Position numbers and translations under genes: made by a program. From NCBI RefSeq assembly GCF_039654945.1, contig NW_027361767.1:1550001-1614000 (forward strand): DNA of 64,000 nt, given 5' to 3'. Shown piece by piece: positions 3,381 through 25,794 of the stretch (its first letter is position 1; each line of letters opens with the position of its first letter). The notes beneath the pieces were generated by a model. That model saw only the letters and a program-made list of their open reading frames with translations, had not been told where the DNA came from and searched no databases. Source of the stretch: Dendrobates tinctorius (Eukaryota).

Positions 3381-3693
3381 GGCTATGTGCACACGCTGCG
3401 GATTCACCAGCGGATTTTTCTTTGTGGATCCGCAGGTAAAACCGCCGCTAAAATGACCTGCGGATTGGCCAGCGGTTTTTCCCTGCAGTTTGACACCTGG
3501 ACAATGGAATAGGTGGCAAACCGCAGCGGAATCCGCAGAAAGAATTGACATGTCAATTCTTTCTGCAGACTCAAAACCGCAGCTTTTCCGAAGTAAAAAA
3601 ACCGCAGCATGTGCACAGCGGATTGTAAATCCCATAGATTTACATGGTACTGTACACTGAACTACAGCAGATCCGCAGCATGTGCACATACCC
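3381..3693. mobile_element. Harbinger-type MITE
   Basis: TIR ggctatgtgcacacgctgcgg / ccgcagcatgtgcacataccc, TSD taa. Confidence 0.85.
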
Positions 3694-7304: not shown

Positions 7305-10300
7305 ATGTTCTCCATCGCTCATAGGCTCCATTCTCTTCCACTGAGGGCTTCAGTCTTTACTTCCAAAAGTCTGAGAAGGATTTCCTGCGCGTTCATGATG
7401 GAGGGGGCTGCACCCTCCCAAGAAGAGACTGTTATCACAGAGGGGAAAGCCAATGTCATCTATCCCAGCGCCAACCAAGTGTTTTATAACCCAGTGCAGG
7501 AGTTCAACCGAGACCTGACGTAAGTGGAATCATGCCCTTGAGGGGTTTCACTAATGGGCCGAGATGCATCATAAAGGCAGGGTGATAGTCTGTATATCTT
7601 CATCTGTGGATGTGGCACCACCAATATATTCTTCTGTTTTATCCTCAGTTGTGCTGTCCTCACAGAGTTTGCTCGTATGCAGCTGGCAGAGAAAGGCATC
7701 GACCGTGAGTATGAGGTTTCTGTAATGCCCCTACACAAGAAGGATTTACTGCAAGGGCGGACTGGGACAGGCCCTTGGACAGGACCTGTGTCTGAGCACA
7801 CGCTACATATATATGCATAGTCACCACTCACCGTAGTCACACATACATAAGATACACACACATGCGTTGTTAGGATATTTCCATGTTATTTACAGATATG
7901 TGATATTCCATTTAAAAAAAAGTATAAAAAGAATATGATTATTGTGATTTCTTCATTTTTTGTTTGGAAAAAAAAGTTACTTTATTTGTATCCCTAAAAT
8001 AAAATAATGTAGAAGTGTACAGATATATAGATATTTATCTCTATGTACCAGTACATTATGCCTGTAAAGAAGAAGAATGCTGTGTAGATCTTTGAGGATT
8101 GACTCTGCCTAATCTGTGCCTCATTCCTGGGCTGTCTACCCACCAAGTTAGAGGTTGTGATTTTGAATTCTGAGATTACTCTTCAATAAATTAAATGCTT
8201 AACCACAAAGGCATCTACTGAGCACCGACAGTTCCCAGGGGTCATTCCCCCAATGCGGGAGAAAACAAAATGACCTGTTGTAGTGTCCTGACTGAGATAC
8301 ATGCAGTGCGCCCGACCCCCTTCTTCCACATGGGCCCCTGCACATTTTGGGTTAGAGTCCCTGTCTCTTTATCCTGACGTGTCTGTATTTTCTTTTCTAT
8401 TGCAGTGGTGGTGCCAGGGGAGAAGGAGCAGCAGAAAGTGGTGGTGGATCTGTCAGACAATGGAGAGGACTGTGAGATATCTGCCCCTGACAATAATCCT
8501 GCTCCTACAGAGAGACGCCGTGTGACTGTAGGAGAGTCCTGTCCAGTAAGTGCTGAGTAATATGTCAGGAGGGCATCTCCAAGATCCGTGCCAAATATCT
8601 GATTAGCAGTTGGCACAGGATTTTGGCTAAATGGTTTTTCTGCAACTTGTTTTCTTTTAATTAAAAACCGACCCACGGGGGGTAAAGGATCGTGCAGACG
8701 TCTGTGGATTTCAGTCCGATCTCAGACCACAATGCACTGAGTGGCCACTGGCCTCTCAACCCGAACGTGACAGTCTCACAGAAACGTATGAAGCTTCAAC
8801 GCTGAGGTTGGGAGAGCCGCCGGCCCGTCCGAGCATAGGCAGTCAATGCTCGGACCGAGGCACAGACGTCTGCTTCAACCTCAAGAAAGCACAAATAAGT
8901 GGGTGCACAAATAAGTGGGTACACACCTACCGAGCTGCTGCCATTCTGCCACCTGCAGCTCCTACAGGGGGCGTCATGTAGCTTTCCAAATGCCTGAATA
9001 CCAAAACATCCTAGAATAGGAGGCAGCACCTCCAGGACGATACCCCAGGGTGCCATCACTTATGATTGCACTCCTCTTGTTTTTTCTATGTGTTTAGTTC
9101 CTCTCACCCTAATCTCTGGACTTTATCTCCCACCGTCTCTCTGTCAGGAGGGGCTGCGGGTCCTGGAGGGTCTGGCTGCATCTGGGCTCCGTTCCATCCG
9201 TTTTGCCCTGGAGGTGCCCGGACTGCAGAGCATTGTGGCCAACGACTTCTCTGCCAGTGCGGTGAAGCTGATCAAGAGAAACATCCAGTTCAATGGCGTA
9301 GAGCAGCTTGTGACTGCCAGCTATAGTGATGCCAGGTAAGCGTACGGGGTTAATGAAGGGGACTCCAAACCTGAAACTTAAAATCAATAGTTTCCATACG
9401 TTCGAATAGACGACAACCGGTGGACAGAGGTGGCACGGAAGAAAGCAGCTAAAATTAGACAGGGATTCACTGATTTAATGTTGGTTGCAATTGGGAGAAA
9501 ATATATACCTGCCCCAATCCGGCCTTCCTTGCACATGGGAAGATACCCATTTACACTGTTGCCTCATTGCTGTCCCATGTTGGTGCCGAGGAGGCAGATT
9601 TTGGACCACTTTCTGGAAGTGTTGCCATTGGAGTGCCAGGTAAAGTATTACTTTCCCGCTATCGCAGCCATTGCTATGGGACGCTGCAGTGATATTTGGG
9701 ACTCTGCATATACCAATTCCTGTAAGAAACTATGTTCTGACATTGCGGGTGGAGCTGGGCACATATATAATAACATGATTAGCATTCACAGGAATGCGGC
9801 TGTGTCACTGACTCGCCTCGTCTGGAATTAGGTATAATTGCTATTTATTCCTTGTGCACTTGGAAACAATGGACACTACGTTCCTGCCATCCTAAAACCA
9901 CTTTAAGGTGTGTGTATTCCTGCAGCCACCAATAGGGGGGGTGAGGGAGCTTAATGCACATGTCCAGGCCTCACTTCCCTCTGGTGGTGACTGTGTGTAT
10001 ATGTCTAGGCCTCACTGCTCCCTCTGGTGGTGCCTGCGTGTATATGTCCAGGCCTCACTGCTCCCTCTGGTGGTGCCTGCGTGTATATGTCCAGGCCTCA
10101 CTGCTCCCTCTGGTGGTGACTGCGTGTATATGTCCAGGCCTCACTGCTCCCTCTGGTGGTGCCTGCGTGTATATGTCCAGGCCTCACTGCTCCCTCTGGT
10201 GGTGACTGTGTTATTTTTTCTTTAGGATGCTGATGTATAACCGGATGGGAAAACACGATCGCTTCGATGTTATCGATCTCGATCCTTATGGCAGCCCCGC

Positions 10301-13300: not shown

Positions 13301-16300
13301 CACACCGTGGGTACCAACCCCACATGAGACGCTTAACTTCGCGCATGGTGGGCATAGCCACATGCGGGAAGTAAGCGATTCTCATGCATTCCTATGGGTG
13401 CGGAATCGCGGCAATTCTTTGCGATTCCGCACAAAAGAATGAGCATGCTGCGATTTTTTTCCGCGATGCGATTCCGCCGCGGAAAAAAGCGCAGCATTAG
13501 CACAGCATGTGCGGAATGCCATAGGAATGCATGGGGGGGGGGGCGTTCTGTACACGATTTTTAAACGTTTTTGCGCCGAAATTCGCGGCAAAACTGCTTA
13601 AAAATCGCATTGTGGGCACACAGCCTTAAACTGTAAAGTGCTGCGGAATATGTTGGCGCTATATAAAGATTATTATTATTTAACCGGGTCTTCTAGTGAT
13701 AGACTATTGCTTTTAGTGCCACTAGGTTACGCCATACTCTTGCACAGTCTACGAAGTCTCCCAATTAACATCCTGCACCGCTTCTATTTCCGAGCCCCAT
13801 TGTAGATGATCCTCGTGTTATTTTCCGTCTTCCCCAGGCCCTGCGTATCCTCTTACACAGCTTAGATCTGCGCGCCAATTGTTACCAGCGTTACATTGTT
13901 CCTCTGCTCAGCGTCTCCGCCGACTTCTACATACGGGTGTTTGTGCGAGTCTTCACTGGACAGGCCAAGGTAAAGATGTCCGCCAGGTGAGTGCTGCTCC
14001 GGAGACCGCGCAAGTGTATCTATAACTAAAAAATATAACCGTAATTCCCCCCCCATTTATCTCCATAGTAAACAAGCCCTGGTGTACAATTGTGTGGGCT
14101 GCGGAACGTACCATCTGCAGCGGATGGGGAGAGCTGTCGCTCATGGAAACAAGTGAGTTGCTTCAATGACTGGGAAATTTACCAGCACTTCACTTTATAT
14201 AAATCGCTTGAAGCAAGTCAGTAAGGTGAGACTACATATCGAAGAGCTTTGACGGAAGCCTATAAAGCCTCTTAGCCCATGGGAAGCCCTTCTTGAACTT
14301 CACACGTCGGGCGCAGGCATATGGATAACACACGAGGCCTTTCAGCCACTTAAACGATCACATAAAGCGTGTTTTCCCGCGCCCATTGGCAGTGACGTAA
14401 TTGTTGGGTGCCGGTGAGTTGCCACGGCATCCCGGAGCCTACTTAAGACCCCTGCTGCTGCCATCTTTGTACTCCCATGTAGTTCAGTTATAGGCACAGA
14501 TGGTAATTTCTTCTATATACTGCAGCTCTGTGATATTCCAGTATATAGTACGAGTGGTCAAATGTCCTAGAAGGACTAAAAAGTAAAGTAACAAACAGAA
14601 AAAAAGTCTAAGTCCACCTTTGTCCGATCAAAGATAAAATTGTCATTTTTCATTCACTGCATCTACGATAAAAATACATAAAAAAAGCAATCAAAACTTT
14701 GTAAATACCCCAAAATGGTACACTAAAAAAAAAAAACAAAAAAGCCTTCAATGGAAAAATAAAATTAATAAGATGAAAATCTTCATATAATATACTAAAA
14801 GACTAAAAATAAAGATTCGGGACTCAGAAAACGTCAAAATGAAGAAAAACGTTATTTTTTAAATACTAAAATATATATAAAAAAATGGAGTGATCATGAA
14901 GGGGTTAAAGGGTAACTAAACTTTCAGCCAACGTTTGACATGTCGGGCGGATAAATTCTGATTTGGTGGGCAGGTAGCTCTGCGATCCAACGGGGCAGAA
15001 GTGATCGGCTGATCCTTGGAGCGTCGAAGGTCTCTACAGTGCAGAATATTGGCTCTAGCCCGAAGTGGCTGATAACAGGGAGCTACAGCGAGTGCAGCTC
15101 GGAGTCTGCAGGGCTGCCGGTGGACATTGGTGCTGTAGTTAATGGATGTAACGCTCTCATTTCGCAGTATGAAGTACTCTGCCGGGACCGGGCCTCCCGT
15201 GGGAACAAGCTGCGAGTTTTGCCGACAGAAGCACCAGGTAGTGAGACCGCCCGTTATATGGTGGCCGTCAGTCCTGCACCCGCCGCCCCGTGTGACCCTG
15301 TGTTGTGTTTCAGGTCGGAGGACCTATCTGGGCCGAGCCCCTCCACGATGTAACATTTGTACAGAAAGTCCTGACCGCGTCAGAGAAAAACCCAAAACGC
15401 TTCAAAACCTCGGACAGGATAGAGGGAGTGCTAAGCATGGTGACCGAGGTCAGAGAGCACCCCCTCCTGGACATTCCCCACACTTGCCCGGTCCTGGCAG
15501 AGCCATAGGCTATGTGTACACTAGGGTGACCGCAAAAAATCGATGTCGGAATTTTGTCCGTCTGGACCCCACAAAACGATTCCCCTTTCCAGATATTGAG
15601 AGAGCCAAAATTTGAGCTCGATCAAACGACGTTAACCCGTGCCGCTCGTCGCTCAAAGTTTGAAAAAATCCAAATTGAGGTATTTTAAGATTTAGGTATT
15701 TTGCATAGTCTGTTAGACTATAAAGAATGTGACAACAACATTGCAGAAATAGCCCTGACCAAATTTTCCAACCATTTGTGGTATTTGAATGCAGAGTTGG
15801 TGGGATTATCGTTTTTTGATCCCACCATTACAGACAATGAAAAGTTGTTAATGGCTAATAAATTGCTCAGTAGCACAGATGAACCATCAGAGCACGCTAG
15901 GGTTGTAAATCCAAAAGTTAGGAAATAAAAATTAAAAGAGGTAGGAAGTAACCGACTTTAACGACCTTCTGACAAAAGATGAAGAACAAAAGCAATATGT
16001 CCTGCAAGTTGTAAGCAAATGCCGAGCATTATATTCTGACGTTTCAAAAACTACTTTAACAAAAGCTCTAGAATAGATTAGATAACTATGTAAAATTATC
16101 AACTCATGTAGGTTAGCGTGCTCTGATGGTTCATCTGTGCTACTGAGCAATTTATTAGCCATTAACAACTTTTCATTGTCTGTAATGGTGGGATCAAAAA
16201 ACGATAATCCCACCAACTCTGCATTCAAATACCACAAATGGTTCGAAAATTTGGTCAGGGCTATTTCTGCAATGTTGTTGTCACATTCGTTATAGTCTAA

Positions 16301-19300
16301 CAGACTATGCAAAATACAGTCATATGTAAAAGTTTGGGCACCCCTATTAATGTTAACCTTTTTTCTTTATAACAATTTTGGTTTTTGCAACAGCTATTTC
16401 AGTTTCATATATCTAATAACTGATGGACTCAGTTATATTTCTGGATTCAAATGAGGTTTATTGTACTAACAGAAAATGTGCAATCTGCATTTAAACAAAA
16501 TTTGACCGGTGCAAAACTATGGGCACCCTTATCATTTTCTTGATTTGAACACTCCTAACTACTTTTTACTGACTTCCTGAAGCACTAAACTGGTTTTGTA
16601 ACCTCATTGAGCTTTGAACTTCATAGCCAGGTGTATCAAATCATGAGAAAAGGTATTTAAAGTGGCCACTTGCAAGTAGTTCTCCTATTTGATTCTCCTA
16701 TGAAGAGTGGCATCATGGGATCCTCAAAACAACTCTCAAATGATCTGAAAACAAAGATTATTCAACATAGCTTTTCAGGGGAAGGATACAAAAAGTTGTC
16801 TCAGAGATTTAACCTGTCAGTTTCCACTGTGAGGAACATAGTAAGGAAATGGAAGAACACAGGTACAGTTCTTGTTAAGCCCAGAAGTGGCAGGCCAAGA
16901 AAAATATCAGAAAGGCAGAGAAGAAGAATGGTGAGAACAGTCAAGGACAATCCACAGACCACCTCCAAAGACCTGCAGCATCATCTTGCTGCAGATGGTG
17001 TCACTGTGCATCGGTCAACAATACAGCGCACTTTGCACAAGGAGAAGCTGTATGGGAGAGTGATGCGAAAGAAGCCGTTTCTGCAAGCACGCCACAAACA
17101 GAGTCGCCTGAGGTATGCAAAAGCACATTTGGACAAGTCAGTTACATTTTGGAAGAAGGTCCTGTGGACTGATGAAACAAAGATTGAGTTGTTTGGTCAT
17201 ACAAAAAGGCGTTATGCATGCGCTGTATTGTTGACCGATGCACAGTGACACCATCTGCAGCAAGATGAGGCTGCCGGTCTTTGGAGGTGGTCTGTGGATT
17301 GTCCTTGACTGTTCTCACCATTCTTCTTCTCTGTCCTTCTGATATTTTTCTTGGCCTGCCACTTCTGGGCTTAACAAGAACTGTACCTGTGTTCTTCCAT
17401 TTCCTTACTATGTTCCTCACAGTGGAAACTGACTGGTTAAATCTCTGCGACAACTTTTTGTATCCTTCCCCTGAAAAGCTATGTTGAATAATCTTTGTTT
17501 TCAGATCATTTGAGAGTTGTTTTGAGGAGCCCATGATGCCACTCTTCATAGGAGAATCAAATAGGAGAACTACTTGCAAGTGGCCACCTTAAATACCTTT
17601 TCTCATGATTTGATACACCTGGCTATGAAGTTCAAAGCTCAATGAGGTTACAAAACCAATTTAGTGCTTCAGGAAGTCAGTAAAAAGTAGTTAGGAGTGT
17701 TCAAATCAAGAAAATGATAAGGGTGCCCATACTTTTGCACCGGTCAAATTTTGTTTAAATGCAGATTGCACATTTTCTGTTAGTACAATAAACCTCATTT
17801 GAATCCAGAAATATAACTGAGTCCATCAGTTATTAGATATATGAAACTGAAATAGCTGTTGCAAAAACCAAAATTGTTATAAAGAAAAAAGGTTAACATT
17901 AATAGGGGTGCCCAAACTTTTACATATGACTGTACCTAAATCTTAAAATACCTCAATTTGGATTTTTTCAAACTTTGAGCGACGAGCGGCACGGGTTAAC
18001 GTCGTTTGATCGAGCTCAAATTTTGGCTCTCTCAATATCTGGAAAGGGGAATCGTTCTGTGGGGTCCAGACGGACAAAATTCTGACATTTTTTCCCCCCC
18101 ATATGAGATCCGGTCACCCTAGTGTACACGTTGCGGATTCTGCTGCGGATCCGCAGCGGATTTGGCCCTGCGGACCCGCAGCGGTGTACAGTACCATGTT
18201 AGCCTATGAAAAACAAAAACCGCTGTGCAGACGCTGCGGATTTTTCCGCGAATTACAATCCGCAGCATGTCAATTGTTTGTGCGGATTCCACAGCGGTTT
18301 CACACCTTATCATTATGAGGTGTGAAACCGCAGGGCAAAACCGCAGGCTAATCCGCAGATAAACCGCAGGACTTTTGTCCTGCGGATTTCACAAAATCCA
18401 CAGTGCAATCCGCAACATGTGCACATAGCCATACTCTTGCTCATCCACCAGCTGATGGCGTTTAACCTTATTTTTCGCCAGGAGCTGAATATCCCGTTAT
18501 ATTACACCCTGGACAACCTGAGCAGCACCGTGCGCTGTAACACCCCATCGCTGCTGCAGTTCAGGTGAGTTCCTGCAGCCCTTCCTTATGTTTGCAGCAG
18601 CAGCCCTCCCCCCCATATGTCTGAGTCCTGTGGAGTGACGCTGCTGCCCGTGGGCGTCCCTTTCACCCGGGACAGAGGGTCATCGTGTCCCGATTAATAG
18701 GACATGAGCAGGATTCCTGGCGGCGGCATCATCTATCGAGCGTGGTACACAATCACTTTAACCCTGTCTTCCAGGTCTGCCCTGCTGCATGCTGGGTATA
18801 AAGTCTCGCTGTCACACGCCTGCCAGAACGCCATAAAGACTGACGCTCCACCCTCTGTTATCTGGGACATAATGAGATGCTGGGTGAGCCACTTTGTATT
18901 TCTTCATCTGCGCGAATCTGAGGTTATTTGAGTGATGATCGGCATGGCTTCTCTTGTCGGGAAGGGGGAGGGGGTCCTAAATTCCAGTGGTCTTATTAAT
19001 GGTCGTCATCAAGCAGCAGCTTGTACTGGGTCTTGTAGCTGCTGCAGCACCTCTTTAGGATGAGAAGGGAGAGCTTCGTATTAATGAGTGAGATGAGCCT
19101 ACTGTCAGAGAGGAAGGAACCTATTAATCTAACATGGGGCCATGTACCAGATTATCAGGATTTAGGGACCATGAAGTGTCAGATTATAAAGGATGTGTTA
19201 CACGGAGATGTGATTATGTCCCGAACAGGAGAAACTGAATCCAGTGAAAAGGGAGAAGCTATCGGAGAGCTGCCCGGCCCACCACATCCTCGGGGCAGAG

Positions 19301-20450: not shown

Positions 20451-23400
20451 AAACACCAAGGTTACTTACCGGTAGCCGGTTTTTCCGGAGCCCATGACGG
20501 CACACATGAGAGAGTGGATCCGCCCAGTCAGGACAGGAACCCTACTGAAGATAGAAGGGGCGGTACCTCTCCCTCGCTTCAGTTGGTTTACAGAGCATGA
20601 GAGGCCCCCCGGGTTAGTACACAATGTAAAACTATCACCACATTTTATCTAACTAAAAAAGCACCCAAACTATAGTGCACACCAAAAGGAGTGAAAAGGC
20701 GGGGAATATACAGGTGCCGTCATGGGCTCCGGAAAAAACGGCTACCGGTAAGTAACCTTGGTGTTTTCCCGTCTCCCATGACGGCACACATGAGACTTTT
20801 GTAGAATAAGACACCTTAGGGAGGGACCACCGCTTGCAGCACCCTTCTACCAAAGGTTAGGTCAGTAGAGGAAGGCAGATCAAGGCGGTAGTGCTTAAAA
20901 AAGGTGGAAGGTGAGGACCAAGTAGCGGCTTTACAAATTTGTTCAATCGATACCTCAGCCTTCTCTGCCCAGGAGGTAGCCACGGCTCTGGTGGAGTGAG
21001 CCTTGATGCCTTCTGGAACCGGAGCACCACTTGCGGAGTAGGATAACATAATGGCCTCCCTGATCCATCTGGCAATGGTACTCTAAGCCCTTTTCTACTA
21101 CCTTGAAAGGCTACAAAAAGGGACTGATCTTTCCTCCACTGACTAGTTACTGACATATATTGTACTATGGCTCTTCTTACGTCTAATGTATGGAACTTTT
21201 GCTCCCCAGGGTTTCTAGGATTGTTACAGAACGATGGCAAAGAGATCTCCTGAGTCCTATGAAACTTTTGGACTACCTTGGGGAGATAGGCCGGGTCTGG
21301 TCTTAGAACCACTCGGTCATCCACGATCTGTGTATATGGAGGACATATAGAAAGAGCTTGTAGGTCGCTGACTCTTCGGGCTGACGTTAAGGCTACCAGT
21401 AAGACAGTTTTAAGTGTAAGTAGCTTTGGTGACAGTTCTAGTAGTGGTTCAAAGGGATCTTTGGTTAAGGCCTCTAAGACTAGGTTGAGGTCCCAGGGTG
21501 GTGTCTTTGGGATAATGACCGGCCTTGACCTGCCACAGGACTTTATGAATCGGGACACCCACCTATTGGCTGCTAAGTTGCAGTTATATAGGGCCCCCAA
21601 AGCTGAGACTTGAACTTTGAGGGTGTTAGTGGCTAACCCCAGTTGTAGCCCCAACTGTAAGAATTCTAGGATAGGTCCCACTGGCGCTACATCCCCCAAG
21701 GGTTCTCCCAGGAAGTCTAGGAACTTTTTCCATGTTCTACCGTAGATTTGGGATGTTATAGGTTTCCTACTTTTCAACAGGGTGGAGACTAACCCTGGAG
21801 AGAATCCCTGGCGACTCAGTAGCGCCCCCTCAAATTCCAGGCTGCTAGATGGAAGCCCTTCACCTGAGAGTGGACCACTGGTCCCTGGGAAAGCAGGTCT
21901 GGAATCTCCGGTAGTATCCATGGATCTGTCACTGACATGAGTCTCAGAAGGGAGAACCAAGGCCTTCTCGGCCAAAACGGAGCTATAAGAATTACTCTCG
22001 CTCAATCCTCCCTGATTTTCCTGACCACTACTGGGATCATTGTTATCGGGGGGGAAATGCATAGGCCAGGATGAACTTCCAGGGTATTTGTAGGGCATCT
22101 ACTGCGAAGGGGTTTTCCCTTGGGTTTAGTGAGCAGAACTTCCTGACCTTCCGGTTGTGTGCGGTGGCGAACAGCTCTATTTCTGGTTTGCCCCAGGCCT
22201 GAACTATTTGTTGGAAGACTTGGGGGTTTAGGGACCATTCCCTTTGTCTTAGGTGCCTGCGACTCAGGAAGTCTGCCTGTATATTTTCTGCCCCCTTTAT
22301 GTGCAGTGCTGTGATGGATAACAGATGTTGTTCTGCTAGCTGGAAGAGTAGATCTGATATTTGCATGAGGCCCCGAGATCTCGTTCCCCCCTGGTGATTG
22401 ATGTAGGCTACTACTGCCTGATTGTCCATCATGACCCGGGTGTGGCGGCCCCGAAGTAAGGGAAGGAAATGTCTCACGTCTTTTTCCACTGCCCATAGTT
22501 CTTTTACATTTGAACCGTGATCCCTTTCTAGCGAGGACCAAGTCCCCTGTATTGTGTGGGATCTCAGGTGTGCTCCCCATCCTGAGGCACTCGCGTCTGT
22601 TGTAATGATGTCCTCGACTGGTTTTTGCCACGGGACACCGGCTGTTAATTCTTTTCTACCGTCCACCAGAGCAGGAAATCTCAGCCACTGAGAGACATAG
22701 TTTGCCTTCTAAATGCCCTTTTAATTGTTTCTGTGCTGACAGAACTTCCCACTGTAGTTGCCTTAAGTGGTACTGCGCCCATGCTACTGCGGGTATGCAT
22801 GATGTCAGTGAGCCTAAAAGGGACATTGCGTTCCTCAGTGTCATATTTGGTCTTTGTATTGCTGTGCGAGCTAGGCCCCTTGGTCACTTTGCTCTCTGGT
22901 AGGAGGCAGCGTTGTTGCTCGGAGTCCAATATCAACCCTAGGAAGGATTGCTCTTTTGCTGGGGTTATCCTTGATTTGGGGATGTTTACTATCCCTCCTA
23001 TTCCTACTAGAATTGCTATCACTTCCTTCACTTGGTGTGCGCAGTGGGACTCCGACCTACCAATTACAAGAAAGTCATCTAAGTATGGGACGATCACCAT
23101 GTCCCTGGAACGAAGAAAAGACATTACTTCGGCCATCACTTTGGTAAATACTCTGGGGGCTGTAGACAGGCCAAATGGAAGGGCTGCATATTGGTAGTGT
23201 CTCACCTGCCCCTGGACATAGAGCGCTACTCTCAAATATTTTTGATACTCCCGATGGATTGGGATGTGATAGTAGGCATCTTTTAAGTCTATCACTGCCA
23301 TGAGGCAATGCTGGAACAGGATCTTTGTGGCCGTGTTGATTGACTCCATTTTGAAGGAGCAATTGTCTACCCACTGATTGAGTCTCCTCAGGTTGACAAT

Positions 23401-25794
23401 GGTTCTCCAAGAGCCGTCTGTTTTTTGTATTAAGAAGAGGGGGGAGTAGAACCCCCTTCCTTCTTCTTGCACTGGGACTAACTGTAGGACTTGTTTTTTC
23501 ACTAGTCCCAAGACTTCCGTCTCCAGGGCCAGCTGTTGCTCTTGGGCTTTCCTTCTGGGTGTCATTATGAAGGTACACCTGGGCGGACGGATGAATTTTA
23601 TTTTTAAGCTGTCCTTGATTATATTTAGGACCCATGTACTGGGGGAGATATTTGCCCAGTCGGAAAGGAAGAGAGAAAGCCTTCCCCCTACCTCCGGCCC
23701 AATGTCATTGGGGAGATTTTTTGGAGGAAGTGGAGGGCCCTTTAAACATATAGCCCGATCCTCTTTTTTCTTTAAAGTCCCAGCTTTTTCTATCTCCCGG
23801 GGGACGACCCCTGTTAAATCTCCTCCTCCGAAAGGGCTGCTTTTTAGGTTCTCCCGGAAATCGGGGAAAGCTTTTCTTCCTATCCCCCGCATGTTCCAAA
23901 ATCTCTTCTAGTTTTTTCCCGAAGAGGAATTGGCCATCACATGGAATGGAACATAACCTATGCTTTGATGGTAGATCTCCGGGACACCCTTTAAGCCACA
24001 GGGCTCGTCTTGTCGCATTTGACAGGTTTGCTGCTCTAGCTATCAATCTTGCGGAGTCTGCTGAGGAATCTGCTAGGAAAGCCGCTGCTCCGTGCACCAG
24101 TGTCAGATTAGACAGAATTTCGTCCCTAGGAACTCTATCCTTGATCTGATCCTCTATTTGTTGTAGCCAGACCATGAGGGCACGAGCGGTACAGGTACCA
24201 GCTATCGCTGGTTTCAATCCACCTGCTGAAGCTTCCCAGATGTGCTTCAGGAAACGGTCTGCTTTTTTATCAAGCGAGTCTTTCAACACGGCAAAGTCCT
24301 CTAATGGTAGAGATACCTTTTTTGAGGATCTGGCTACGGCCCCATCAATTTTAGGGACTTTATCCCAGGTTTCTGAATCCTTCTGCTCAAAAGGGTACCT
24401 CTTTGATGTGGAAGGTAAGCACCCTGACCTCTCTGGTATGTCCATTCCCTGTCAATTAGTGCTTTTATTTTATCATTTACAGGGAAGGTACGTTTTCGCT
24501 TTTCCTCCAGTCCTCCAAACATTACATCCTCTAATGATTTGGGAGCCTTTTCCTCTTTACGGCCCATTGTAGCCCTAATCGCTCTGACCAGCTTTTCCAC
24601 ATCCTCCGTTGGGAAACATGGACGGCCGCCTGTATCGCTGTCCGAGGAGGATTCTGAGGACTGAGTAGAGGAGGTGGAGGGGGACAAGGATCTATCCCGC
24701 CCCTTCTGCCTTGGCGAGGCCTCTGAATCGGAGCTCCTTATACGGTTTCTTTTATCTTTCTTTTTAAGGGCTGCCCTTAGTGAACCTTTCACCTCCTGTT
24801 GTATTAACTGTTTAAGGCTAGTCACCAAATCAGGGGTCTTCTCTTGTATAGTTTTGTTTATACAGTCAGCGCAGAGGTCTTTCTGCCACTGGTCTGCCAG
24901 CGGGTGTTTACATAGGGCGCATTCTCTATTTTTGGTTTTGCTGCTGGCCTTCCTCGACCCCTAGTGATCAAACAGAGAAAATGGAACCCCGTTACCACAA
25001 GGGTGACATTCACGTAGATCACTCACCACCGCTGTCAATCAGGGGTACCGATCTCTGAGGCTCCTCAGATGCACTCGTGACGTTTCTCCTGGACATCTCA
25101 GAGTCATGCCGGTTGCGTTTATGACTGCCGCTTCCACCACTCAAGTGACTGTTCCTGGTATGCTGGTGGCCCGGCCTGGCATCTGGCGAGAGGTCTTGCC
25201 CCACTTCCATCATGAAGCCTTGGGTATGAGTGAGTCTTCTGTGGTCATCCCCCTTTTGTAAGGGGGATCCACTGCACTCTCCGCCTCCTCCGGTTACCCC
25301 CACAGTCCCTCCTGCCACCGGGATCTCCTTTCGCTGGCCGGCGTTGTTTGCTATGGGCGCCATCTTGGATTGCCGGCGCCGCCTCCCGTCAGGCAGGCAC
25401 GCCTTTTTCCCAGCGTGCCCTGCGTGTGACGTCAGAGCGGCACGACCCGGAAGCGGCCGCTCCTGATGCCGCTGTGCTTCCTGGATGCAGCAGAGGGGGA
25501 GAGGGTGGCACGGCAGAGCCCCGGGACGTGCTGCTTCTGCGCCCGCTCGGACGCTGAGCCCCCGGGGGACCCGCAGACGGCGCTTCCCGACGTACGGCGC
25601 CCAGGACCCTGCCTGTTCTGCCACGCCGGCACGAGAGAGGGGCAGGTACGTGTTCCTCAGTACACAGGTCCCGGTCAGGACAGGAAACCTAACTGAAGCG
25701 AGGGAGAGGTACCGCCCCTTTTATCTTCAGTAGGGTTCCTGTCCGGACTGGGCAGATCCCCTCTCTCGTGTGTGCTGTCATGGGAGACTGGAAA
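20451..25794 (-). mobile_element. DIRS1-type tyrosine-recombinase retrotransposon, structurally complete, with frameshifts
   Basis: Inverted terminal repeats (~20490-20590 vs ~25685-25790). Internal complementary region 20712-20795 reproduces the junction of both ends. gag ~24960-23705; RT 23892-22681 (DLKDAY, LPFGL, YLDD); RNase H (TDASASGWGA); MTase-like domain; YR 22098-20816 (TSARRVSDL, HSTR, HY). AAA at both boundaries. Confidence 0.95.

What the first reader, a model, noticed from the sequence alone, without database searches (positions are those of the whole stretch)
16317..17932. Mu-killer-like fold-back Tc1: 714-bp inverted arms inside a housekeeping-gene intron
Seen: two left ends of one Tc1 joined in inverted orientation (16317-17030 and 17219-17932, about 10 mismatches by eye) around a 188-bp spacer. 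It has full TIRs, a TA TSD and a length of 1616 bp, close to a normal Tc1. Both arms keep an open paired-like DNA-binding-domain ORF, but the DDE triad is lost. Established: maize Mu killer is an inverted duplication of a transposon end whose read-through hairpin silences the family. Inference: trmt1 pre-mRNA would constitutively make a ~700-bp dsRNA of TIR plus transposase sequence, a possible endo-siRNA or ADAR substrate. Truncated DNA-binding proteins could also compete for TIRs.
Basis: partly seen in the sequence, partly recalled or inferred. Interest (0 to 1): 0.8.

Follow-up and report, generated by a model that had tools for sequence, protein, structure and literature searches.

The report
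Fold-back Tc1 transposon in trmt1 intron
A dead "jumping gene" built from two mirror-image copies of its own front half sits in an intron of a frog tRNA-methyltransferase gene; it is real and would fold the intron RNA into a ~700-bp hairpin, but it looks like one copy of a multi-copy non-autonomous transposon family, and any self-silencing role is untested.

Summary
A 1616-bp Tc1 element of the Sleeping Beauty (IR/DR) type lies at 16317-17932. Its 714-nt arms differ at 10 positions, the loop is 188 nt, and a TA sits on each side. Both arms are left halves. The loop continues the left copy into the start of the catalytic domain and keeps the first catalytic D.

Spliced RNA contigs show the element lies in a 3033-nt intron of a TRM1-family gene on the + strand. 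That intron is almost entirely nested transposons. A sister species (coded organism B) has the empty site, so its intron is about 108 nt. The nest is therefore younger than the species split.

RNAfold pairs 705 of the 714 arm positions.

The scan found this before on other DNA. First-stage notes list at least six more 1614-1616-bp copies with 714-bp arms elsewhere in this genome. I could not test those notes. If they are right, this is an amplified non-autonomous fold-back family, not a unique "killer" locus.

Best reading: aberrant gap repair made the form once, joined at a 2-nt microhomology, and the family's transposase then moved it. The hairpin RNA is a by-product. Silencing, editing and repressor-protein roles remain inference. 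This is a known kind of element, of modest interest.

The parts
16315..16316 (.). Left TA target-site duplication
   Evidence: TA immediately before the terminus CAGTCATATG.
16317..17030 (+). Left arm. Holds the Tc1 left end with the outer binding site at the terminus, the inner direct repeat at 16510-16532, the 5' UTR and transposase codons 1-105.
17031..17218 (+). Loop. It is the uninterrupted continuation of the left copy: the end of the DNA-binding domain and the start of the catalytic domain, with the first catalytic D.
   Evidence: Canonical family contigs run on past 17220 with other sequence (table 7).
17219..17220 (.). Junction microhomology (TG). These two bases are shared by the continuing left copy and the inverted right arm.
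   Evidence: sequence compared with the loose ends of canonical contigs at 17220.
17219..17932 (-). Right arm. It is an inverted second copy of the left end (nt 1-714), 98.6% identical to the left arm.
17933..17934 (.). Right TA target-site duplication
16715..17248 (+). Left ORF, 177 aa from the ATG. It holds the PAI and RED DNA-binding subdomains and about 55 aa of the catalytic domain, then a 9-aa out-of-context tail read across the junction.
17142..17534 (-). Right ORF, 130 aa from the ATG. It holds a DNA-binding domain with 4 replacements relative to the left arm, followed by an unrelated tail.
15521..18121 (.). Host fold-back element into whose right arm the Tc1 fold-back is inserted. Its termini begin TAGGGTGACCG and it is flanked by the 8-bp repeat GTGTACAC. 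Its arms are 15521-15899 and 16114-16316 plus 17935-18121, with a 214-nt loop.
   Evidence: deleting 16317-17934 restores one continuous palindrome (369 of 391 columns identical).
15508..18426 (.). Outermost short inverted-repeat element (15508-15520 plus 18122-18426), split by the host fold-back. It is flanked by the 7-nt direct repeat AGCCATA (15501-15507 and 18427-18433).
   Evidence: The organism B contig joins 15500 to 18427, with 7 letters fitting both sides (table 5).
15449..18481 (+). Intron of the TRM1-family (trmt1) gene, 3033 nt with GT..AG ends, containing the whole nest.
   Evidence: Spliced joint 15446->18480 (cut +2) in runs X5 and X9. Flanking exons 15311-15448 and 18776-18883 hit Pfam TRM PF02005.

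Best explanation
This is a non-autonomous fold-back derivative of a Sleeping Beauty-type (IR/DR) Tc1 transposon. Its right half, which held most of the catalytic domain and the right end, has been replaced by an inverted copy of its own first 714 nt. The form most likely arose once, during repair of an excision gap. Both broken ends would have copied the left end of a template, and the two new strands were joined at a 2-nt microhomology (inferred). The product keeps two complete left ends, each with both transposase-binding sites, so transposase from full-length relatives can move it. It then spread as a family (inferred from untested notes). This copy landed at a TA in the right arm of another fold-back element, inside what was a ~108-nt trmt1 intron, after the split from the sister species (shown). 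As a by-product, trmt1 pre-mRNA must carry a ~705-bp near-perfect hairpin covering the terminal repeat, the 5' UTR and the first 105 transposase codons (predicted). In a frog, such nuclear dsRNA is most likely edited by ADAR and degraded, with at most a minor small-RNA output (inferred). The intron is still spliced correctly (shown).
For: Structure, TA duplication and IR/DR layout. Tc1/SB identity. Breakpoint and 2-nt microhomology: canonical contigs diverge after 17220 (table 7), read. Low divergence: 11 differences in 1616 nt from the family contigs (4 in the left arm, 6 in the right arm, 1 in the loop, tables 3 and 8). Empty site in organism B, whose flanks differ by about 3% (tables 3, 5, 8). 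Correct splicing in two RNA runs. Predicted hairpin. Family status: at least six further 1614-1616-bp copies with 714-bp arms are noted on other pieces of this genome, and one was followed up as 'inserted as a unit' (these are AI notes, not tested here). SB biology: the left IR carries the HDR enhancer, and a transposon substrate (pTBsaXI) was built with identical left IRs (PMC5224488). Microhomology-mediated remodelling of Tc1/mariner elements is documented (PMC3814204). Tc1 elements make up 6.57% of the D. tinctorius assembly and 45,806 of them overlap introns (10.1101/2023.11.06.565769).
Against: I could not read any other fold-back copy myself, so amplification rests on unverified notes. 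No contig listed bridges the 17219 junction in an independent sample. Some arm differences (16517, 16661, 16720) sit in contigs far deeper than single copy, in both species. They may therefore be subfamily variants rather than decay after formation, which complicates both the single-template origin and the age estimate. No RNA evidence for the hairpin itself, for editing or for small RNAs was obtainable.
Confidence: 0.75

Rival explanations
1. Mu killer-like silencer. Read-through hairpin RNA from this copy, or from the whole fold-back family, is diced into siRNAs or fed into the piRNA pathway. It then silences full-length Tc1 elements in trans.
For: The anatomy matches Mu killer: an inverted duplication of the terminal repeat plus the 5' transposase gene, transcribed from a flanking gene (PMC3440606). 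The host intron is transcribed and spliced. A 705-bp stem with perfect runs up to 200 bp is predicted. Read-through Tc1 dsRNA triggers RNAi in C. elegans (review PMC3878927). Small RNAs derived from intronic transposons exist in Xenopus (PMC3875865).
Against: No small-RNA or methylation data could be reached. The helicase of vertebrate Dicer was already inactive in vertebrate ancestors, and long dsRNA is diced poorly (PMC10328071). Tc1-family RNA in run X5 is about 40-fold deeper than trmt1 mRNA, so the family is not obviously silent at the RNA level. With tens of thousands of intronic Tc1 copies in both orientations, dsRNA would exist without this locus.
Confidence: 0.12
2. The fold-back formed in place at this locus from an ordinary full-length insertion. 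This copy would then be the founder, or a unique event, rather than a transposed fold-back.
For: An in-place rearrangement would leave the same TA duplication and intact host flanks. The microhomology junction fits local aberrant repair.
Against: Several copies of identical length and arm size are reported elsewhere in the genome. At most one of them can be the founder.
Confidence: 0.07
3. The truncated DNA-binding-domain proteins are expressed and act as repressors by occupying the terminal repeats, like the KP repressor of the P element.
For: Both ORFs are open through the PAI and RED subdomains. Dominant-negative and titration effects are described for Tc1/mariner elements (PMC3878927).
Against: At about 0.7% divergence, open ORFs are expected by chance. 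The right-arm ORF has 4 replacements, including one to proline, against 1 synonymous change. No protein with the junction-specific tail exists in the 5.8-billion-protein set. No promoter or polyadenylation evidence was found.
Confidence: 0.04
4. Assembly artefact, for example a palindromic long read.
For: Short-read contigs break inside the repeats, and none shown spans the junction (table 8).
Against: The arms differ at 10 sites and are unequal: 902 nt of left copy against 714 nt of right copy. The ends are exact termini with TA. The host palindrome continues seamlessly across the insertion. The same structure is reported at other loci.
Confidence: 0.02

Closest known systems
Mu killer (maize MuDR derivative)
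   Same: Both are inverted duplications of a terminal repeat plus the 5' part of the transposase gene. Both lie where a flanking gene's transcription would yield a long hairpin RNA (PMC3440606).
   Different: Mu killer is a single Mutator-superfamily locus in a plant, with demonstrated siRNAs and heritable silencing. This is a Tc1 element in a vertebrate and apparently one of many mobile copies. No small-RNA or silencing data exist for it.
Tc1 read-through dsRNA in C. elegans germline RNAi (as reviewed in PMC3878927)
   Same: Both involve the Tc1 superfamily and transcription that starts in flanking DNA. In both, the RNA folds back on inverted repeats to give dsRNA.
   Different: In the worm the stem is the short natural terminal repeat and RNAi is efficient. 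Here the stem is 714 nt and includes coding sequence, and the host is a vertebrate whose Dicer handles long dsRNA poorly (PMC10328071).
Non-autonomous derivatives of Tc1/mariner made by microhomology-mediated rearrangement (for example mosquito Stowaway-like MITEs, PMC3814204); long-TIR and Foldback-like elements such as Galileo (PMC3573991)
   Same: Internal rearrangement at short microhomology leaves functional ends. The product is mobilised in trans and can amplify. The long inverted arms are made of element sequence.
   Different: This is not a simple deletion. It is a replacement of the right half by an inverted left half, and it keeps full Tc1 length and two DNA-binding-domain ORFs.
siteRNA source loci in Xenopus tropicalis (PMC3875865)
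   Same: Both are transposon remnants inside introns of protein-coding frog genes. In Xenopus these give 23-29-nt small RNAs.
   Different: siteRNAs are mostly antisense to the remnant and are linked to repressed host genes. Here the host gene is expressed and spliced, and no small-RNA data exist.

Membership tests
Tc1/mariner, IR/DR (Sleeping Beauty-like) subgroup | TA target-site duplication | tested here: met
   TA on both sides of exact termini.
Tc1/mariner, IR/DR (Sleeping Beauty-like) subgroup | Long terminal inverted repeats with two transposase-binding direct repeats per end | tested here: met
   The outer site at the terminus and an inner 23-nt repeat 185 nt inside are 83-87% alike, at both ends (D2/D3, I5/I7).
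Tc1/mariner, IR/DR (Sleeping Beauty-like) subgroup | Paired-like (PAI plus RED) N-terminal DNA-binding domain | tested here: met
   Left ORF: Pfam HTH_SB E=2e-16 and HTH_Tnp_Tc3_2 E=1.4e-23. Right ORF: HTH_SB E=4.9e-16; its truncated HTH_Tnp_Tc3_2 match (25.7 bits) is below the 31.5-bit cut-off. The left ORF matches solved SB PAI and RED subdomains.
Tc1/mariner, IR/DR (Sleeping Beauty-like) subgroup | Complete DDE catalytic domain (needed for an autonomous member) | tested here: not met
   Only the first about 55 residues of the catalytic domain, with the first D, remain. The element is therefore non-autonomous.
Mu killer-type silencer locus | Inverted duplication of the terminal repeat plus the 5' transposase gene | tested here: met
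Mu killer-type silencer locus | [quoted passage not shown] | tested here: inconclusive
   The host intron is transcribed, since spliced mRNA contigs exist. The hairpin is predicted. No read or contig specific to the hairpin RNA was seen.
Mu killer-type silencer locus | siRNAs derived from the hairpin | not testable with these tools
   Only Logan contigs of DNA and mRNA-type runs were available.
Mu killer-type silencer locus | Heritable silencing of the autonomous element in trans | not testable with these tools
   This needs genetics or epigenomics. Family RNA is abundant in run X5, which does not favour strong silencing.
Amplified non-autonomous transposon family | Several copies with the same internal junction but unrelated flanks | not tested
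   There are only AI notes of at least six other 1614-1616-bp copies on other pieces. The junction 24-mer is absent from metagenome contigs, and the window holds no other copy.

The most novel reading that the evidence does not exclude
The fold-back form is a family of perhaps hundreds of copies that sit in introns of expressed genes. Together these copies supply transposase-sequence hairpin RNA that feeds a small-RNA pathway and restrains the most abundant DNA-transposon family of a 6-Gb frog genome. That would be a vertebrate counterpart of Mu killer, and one that spreads itself.
Probability: 0.1. Interest if true: 0.7.

Novelty: new member of a known kind. Interest (0 to 1): 0.3.

Why it matters
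How a genome first recognises an active DNA transposon is well worked out in maize (Mu killer, Ac/Ds rearrangements) but not in vertebrates. A young fold-back Tc1 family whose members lie in transcribed introns gives a concrete, countable set of natural hairpin loci. Small-RNA, editing and methylation data could test that idea in a frog whose genome is 6.6% Tc1. On the evidence so far, however, this copy is an ordinary non-autonomous rearrangement product. Its firm value is as a dated, lineage-specific insertion showing that the family moved after the split from a sister species.

Tried and rejected
- **Junction in metagenomes.** An exact scan for a 24-nt junction word in metagenome contigs found nothing. 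That collection is not expected to hold frog DNA, so the blank says little.
- **Junction-specific protein tail.** I searched the 5.8-billion-protein set with the C-terminal 48 aa of the left ORF, hoping to find other fold-back copies. It returned 22 Tc1 fragments; where a source names the organism most are teleost (Prochilodus, Poeciliopsis) and many carry no name. Identity was at most 85% and coverage at most 85%, and none carries the tail.
- **Read laying.** All four runs are contigs. No listed piece bridges 17219, so neither independent confirmation of the junction nor a copy count was possible. No hyper-editing signal can be read from contigs.
- **Findings look-up by sequence.** Blank.
- **Rfam.** A scan of 15000-19000 at E<=0.1 gave no match.
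- **Pfam on the host fold-back ORFs.** No family matched.
- **Other copies in the window.** A search for other copies or fragments of this Tc1 family found none.
- **Rejected: two elements sharing one TA.** I considered that a middle element and the Tc1 fold-back lay side by side at the same TA. After deleting the Tc1 fold-back, the host arms form one continuous palindrome. The left-hand TA is therefore just the mirror image of the target site.
- **Rejected: assembly artefact.** See rival explanations.

Full report

Yes. The repeat finder reports inverted arms at 16315-17030 and 17219-17934. They are 716 nt long including the flanking TA, 99% complementary, and 188 nt apart. A script counts exactly 10 mismatches in the 714-nt arms, 4 transitions and 6 transversions.

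The 28-nt terminus beginning CAGTCATATG occurs only at the two ends of this element, against zero expected by chance. TA lies directly outside each terminus. A 23-nt inner repeat lies 185 nt inside each end. This is the IR/DR layout of Sleeping Beauty-type Tc1 elements.

**2. What the element encodes**

The left ORF (16715-17248, 177 aa) matches Pfam HTH_SB (E=2e-16) and HTH_Tnp_Tc3_2 (E=1.4e-23). The right ORF (17534-17142 on the minus strand, 130 aa) matches HTH_SB; its truncated HTH_Tnp_Tc3_2 match (25.7 bits) is below Pfam's 31.5-bit cut-off.

The 188-nt loop is not foreign sequence. It is the uninterrupted continuation of the left copy.

**3. The breakpoint**

Contigs from ordinary family members match the window up to 17220 and then run on with other sequence, which reads as further transposase (table 7; runs X1 and X5). 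The inverted arm begins at 17219. The two copies therefore overlap by 2 nt (TG).

That is the signature of a microhomology join. I infer the form arose during repair of an excision gap, with both broken ends copying the left end of a template. The inference is plausible because the outer terminal repeats are alike. Comparable microhomology-mediated remodelling of a Tc1/mariner element is documented in a mosquito (PMC3814204). This step is inferred, not shown.

**4. The host gene**

Runs X5 and X9 contain contigs that join 15446 to 18480, skipping 3033 nt with GT..AG ends. They also splice the two neighbouring introns (table 5). The exon translations 9145-9339, 15311-15448 and 18776-18883 hit Pfam TRM, the N2,N2-dimethylguanosine tRNA methyltransferase family PF02005.

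The element therefore lies in an intron (15449-18481) of a TRM1-family gene on the + strand, and the intron is spliced correctly. I searched the exons one by one by reference and made no joined model.

**5. The surroundings**

The intron is almost wholly transposon sequence.

- Deleting 16317-17934 (the element plus one TA) restores a single continuous palindrome. Its arms are 15521-15899 and 16114-16316 plus 17935-18121, identical in 369 of 391 columns, around a 214-nt loop.
- The Tc1 fold-back therefore sits at a TA in the right arm of another fold-back element. That host element has termini beginning TAGGGTGACCG and an 8-bp flanking repeat GTGTACAC, which is hAT-like by those features only.
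- The host element in turn splits the left terminal repeat of a short inverted-repeat element (15508-15520 plus 18122-18426). This outermost element is flanked by the 7-nt repeat AGCCATA.
- The target context around the Tc1 insertion (A-A-A-TA-C-C-T) fits the ANNTANNT preference I recall for Sleeping Beauty. That is from memory and was not checked.

**6. Age**

Run X15 carries a different species label (organism B). Its flanks differ from the window by about 3%: 27 substitutions in about 970 aligned nt (tables 3 and 8).

X15 has a 269-nt contig that runs from the exon to 15500 and then continues at 18427, with the 7 letters AGCCATA fitting both sides (tables 5 and 8). That is a clean empty site. 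Organism B lacks the entire nest and has an intron of about 108 nt.

X15 contigs include unspliced introns, so the run is DNA and the joint is not a splice. The Tc1 family itself is very deep in X15, so the family predates the split while this insertion postdates it.

Against the family contigs in X5, this copy has 4 differences in the left arm (16517, 16590, 16661, 16720), 6 in the right arm and 1 in the loop (17138). That is 11 in 1616 nt, or 0.7% (tables 3 and 8).

One caveat applies. At 16517, 16661 and 16720 the left-arm state lies in contigs far deeper than single copy, and at 16517 in both species. Some differences may therefore be subfamily variants rather than decay after formation.

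**7. The predicted RNA**

RNAfold gives -1348 kcal/mol for the element, against about -390 for shuffled sequence. 705 of the 714 arm positions pair with their mirror partner. The same pairing holds when the whole intron is folded (-2241 kcal/mol), and the host fold-back's arms pair as well. The longest perfect duplex run is 200 bp.

Because nearly the whole 2.9-kb insertion is self-complementary, folding would bring the two splice sites back to about 110 nt apart. This may help explain why a tiny intron tolerates the insertion, but that is inference.

**8. Unique locus or family?**

I could not search the genome itself. The notes of this scan list, on other pieces of the same genome, fold-back Tc1 elements of 1616 or 1614 letters with 714-bp arms: s1-383032, s1-386095, s1-377011, s1-382891, s1-364565 and s1-362364. 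Two of these are said to lie in host introns or pre-mRNAs. One was followed up and judged real and "inserted as a unit".

These are unchecked AI notes, and I treat them as a lead. Identical size and arm length at seven places, in roughly 50 Mb read so far, make an amplified family of perhaps hundreds of copies the most economical reading. This changed my reading from "a special locus" to "one member of a non-autonomous family".

Such a family is plausible on known biology:

- The element keeps two complete left ends with both binding sites.
- In Sleeping Beauty the left IR carries the HDR enhancer.
- A transposon substrate (pTBsaXI) with identical left IRs was built for transposition work (PMC5224488).

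**9. Function**

What is shown:

- The element is transcribed as part of a spliced pre-mRNA.
- Its sequence must fold into a long near-perfect hairpin that includes 316 nt of transposase coding sequence.

What is not shown: any small RNA, any editing or any effect on the family.

Three points argue for caution on the silencer reading.

- The helicase of vertebrate Dicer was already inactive in vertebrate ancestors, and long dsRNA is a poor substrate (PMC10328071).
- Tc1-family sequence in run X5 is about 40-fold deeper than trmt1 mRNA (312-456 against 8.4).
- The D. tinctorius genome paper reports Tc1 at 6.57% of the assembly, with 45,806 copies overlapping introns. Sense and antisense Tc1 RNA would be abundant without this locus.

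From established knowledge (the dsRNA-modifying activity first described in Xenopus eggs; cited from memory), ADAR hyper-editing and nuclear decay is the most likely fate of the hairpin.

The repressor-protein idea has no support beyond the open ORFs. At 0.7% divergence, open frames are expected by chance. The right-arm ORF has four replacements (L34Q, R67G, L87R, H89P) against one synonymous change. No protein with the junction-specific tail is in the 5.8-billion-protein set.

**10. Comparison with known systems, and verdict**

The element works like Mu killer in anatomy (PMC3440606) and like the Tc1 read-through dsRNA of C. elegans in principle (PMC3878927). Intronic transposon remnants do yield small RNAs in another frog (PMC3875865).

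Membership in the "silencer" class fails for lack of evidence on its defining functional features. Membership in the IR/DR Tc1 group is met for everything except a complete catalytic domain.

It is a new member of a known kind: a non-autonomous rearranged DNA transposon. Interest is modest at 0.3. It would rise to about 0.7 if the family proves to feed a small-RNA pathway, which I put at about 10%.

**11. Organism**

The runs are coded. I did not verify this.

Noticed in passing
window 15521-16316 + 17935-18121: The host of the Tc1 fold-back is itself a fold-back element. It has ~380-nt arms, a 214-nt loop, termini beginning TAGGGTGACCG and an 8-bp flanking repeat GTGTACAC. Each arm holds an inward-reading 75-aa ORF with no Pfam match. 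The inner part (about 15700-16200) is 100-1000 times deeper in organism A contigs than in organism B (table 2). That suggests a lineage-specific burst, or that the inner part is a separate element. Contigs from other copies start matching at 15687.
   Followed up: partly
window 15501-15507 and 18427-18433: Organism B (run X15) has a clean empty site for the whole 2.9-kb nest, with a single AGCCATA. Its trmt1 intron is about 108 nt. This gives a dated, lineage-specific 28-fold intron expansion that does not disturb splicing.
   Followed up: yes
window 16342 / 17906 (joint seen in run X9): A miniature form of the same Tc1 family exists in run X9. It has the two 26-nt termini joined by 33 unrelated letters, at depth 8 (table 5c). 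This is a MITE-like derivative.
   Followed up: no
window 16768 / 17452 (joint seen in run X9): A snap-back joint links the left arm to the right arm at other breakpoints (mirror position 16797). Depth is 12 and only 29 letters lie on one side. It is either a second fold-back variant or a cDNA artefact on a hairpin template.
   Followed up: no
window 16329-17213, run X5: Contigs of the ordinary Tc1 family in an RNA-type run are 312-456 deep, against 8.4 for spliced trmt1 mRNA. Family sequence is therefore abundant in RNA. DNA carry-over cannot be excluded.
   Followed up: no
window 20850-24830, minus strand: Long ORFs of a retroelement lie here. A 413-aa ORF looks, by eye only, like a tyrosine-recombinase (DIRS-like) protein. 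There are also 403-aa and 207-aa ORFs that look like reverse transcriptase and RNase H, and a gag-like ORF. They lie between trmt1 and the next gene. Another note, s1-369715, covers this stretch.
   Followed up: no
window 18122-18426 and 3385-3657: The outermost short inverted-repeat element has a 68%-identical relative elsewhere in the window. Its family is very deep in both species.
   Followed up: no
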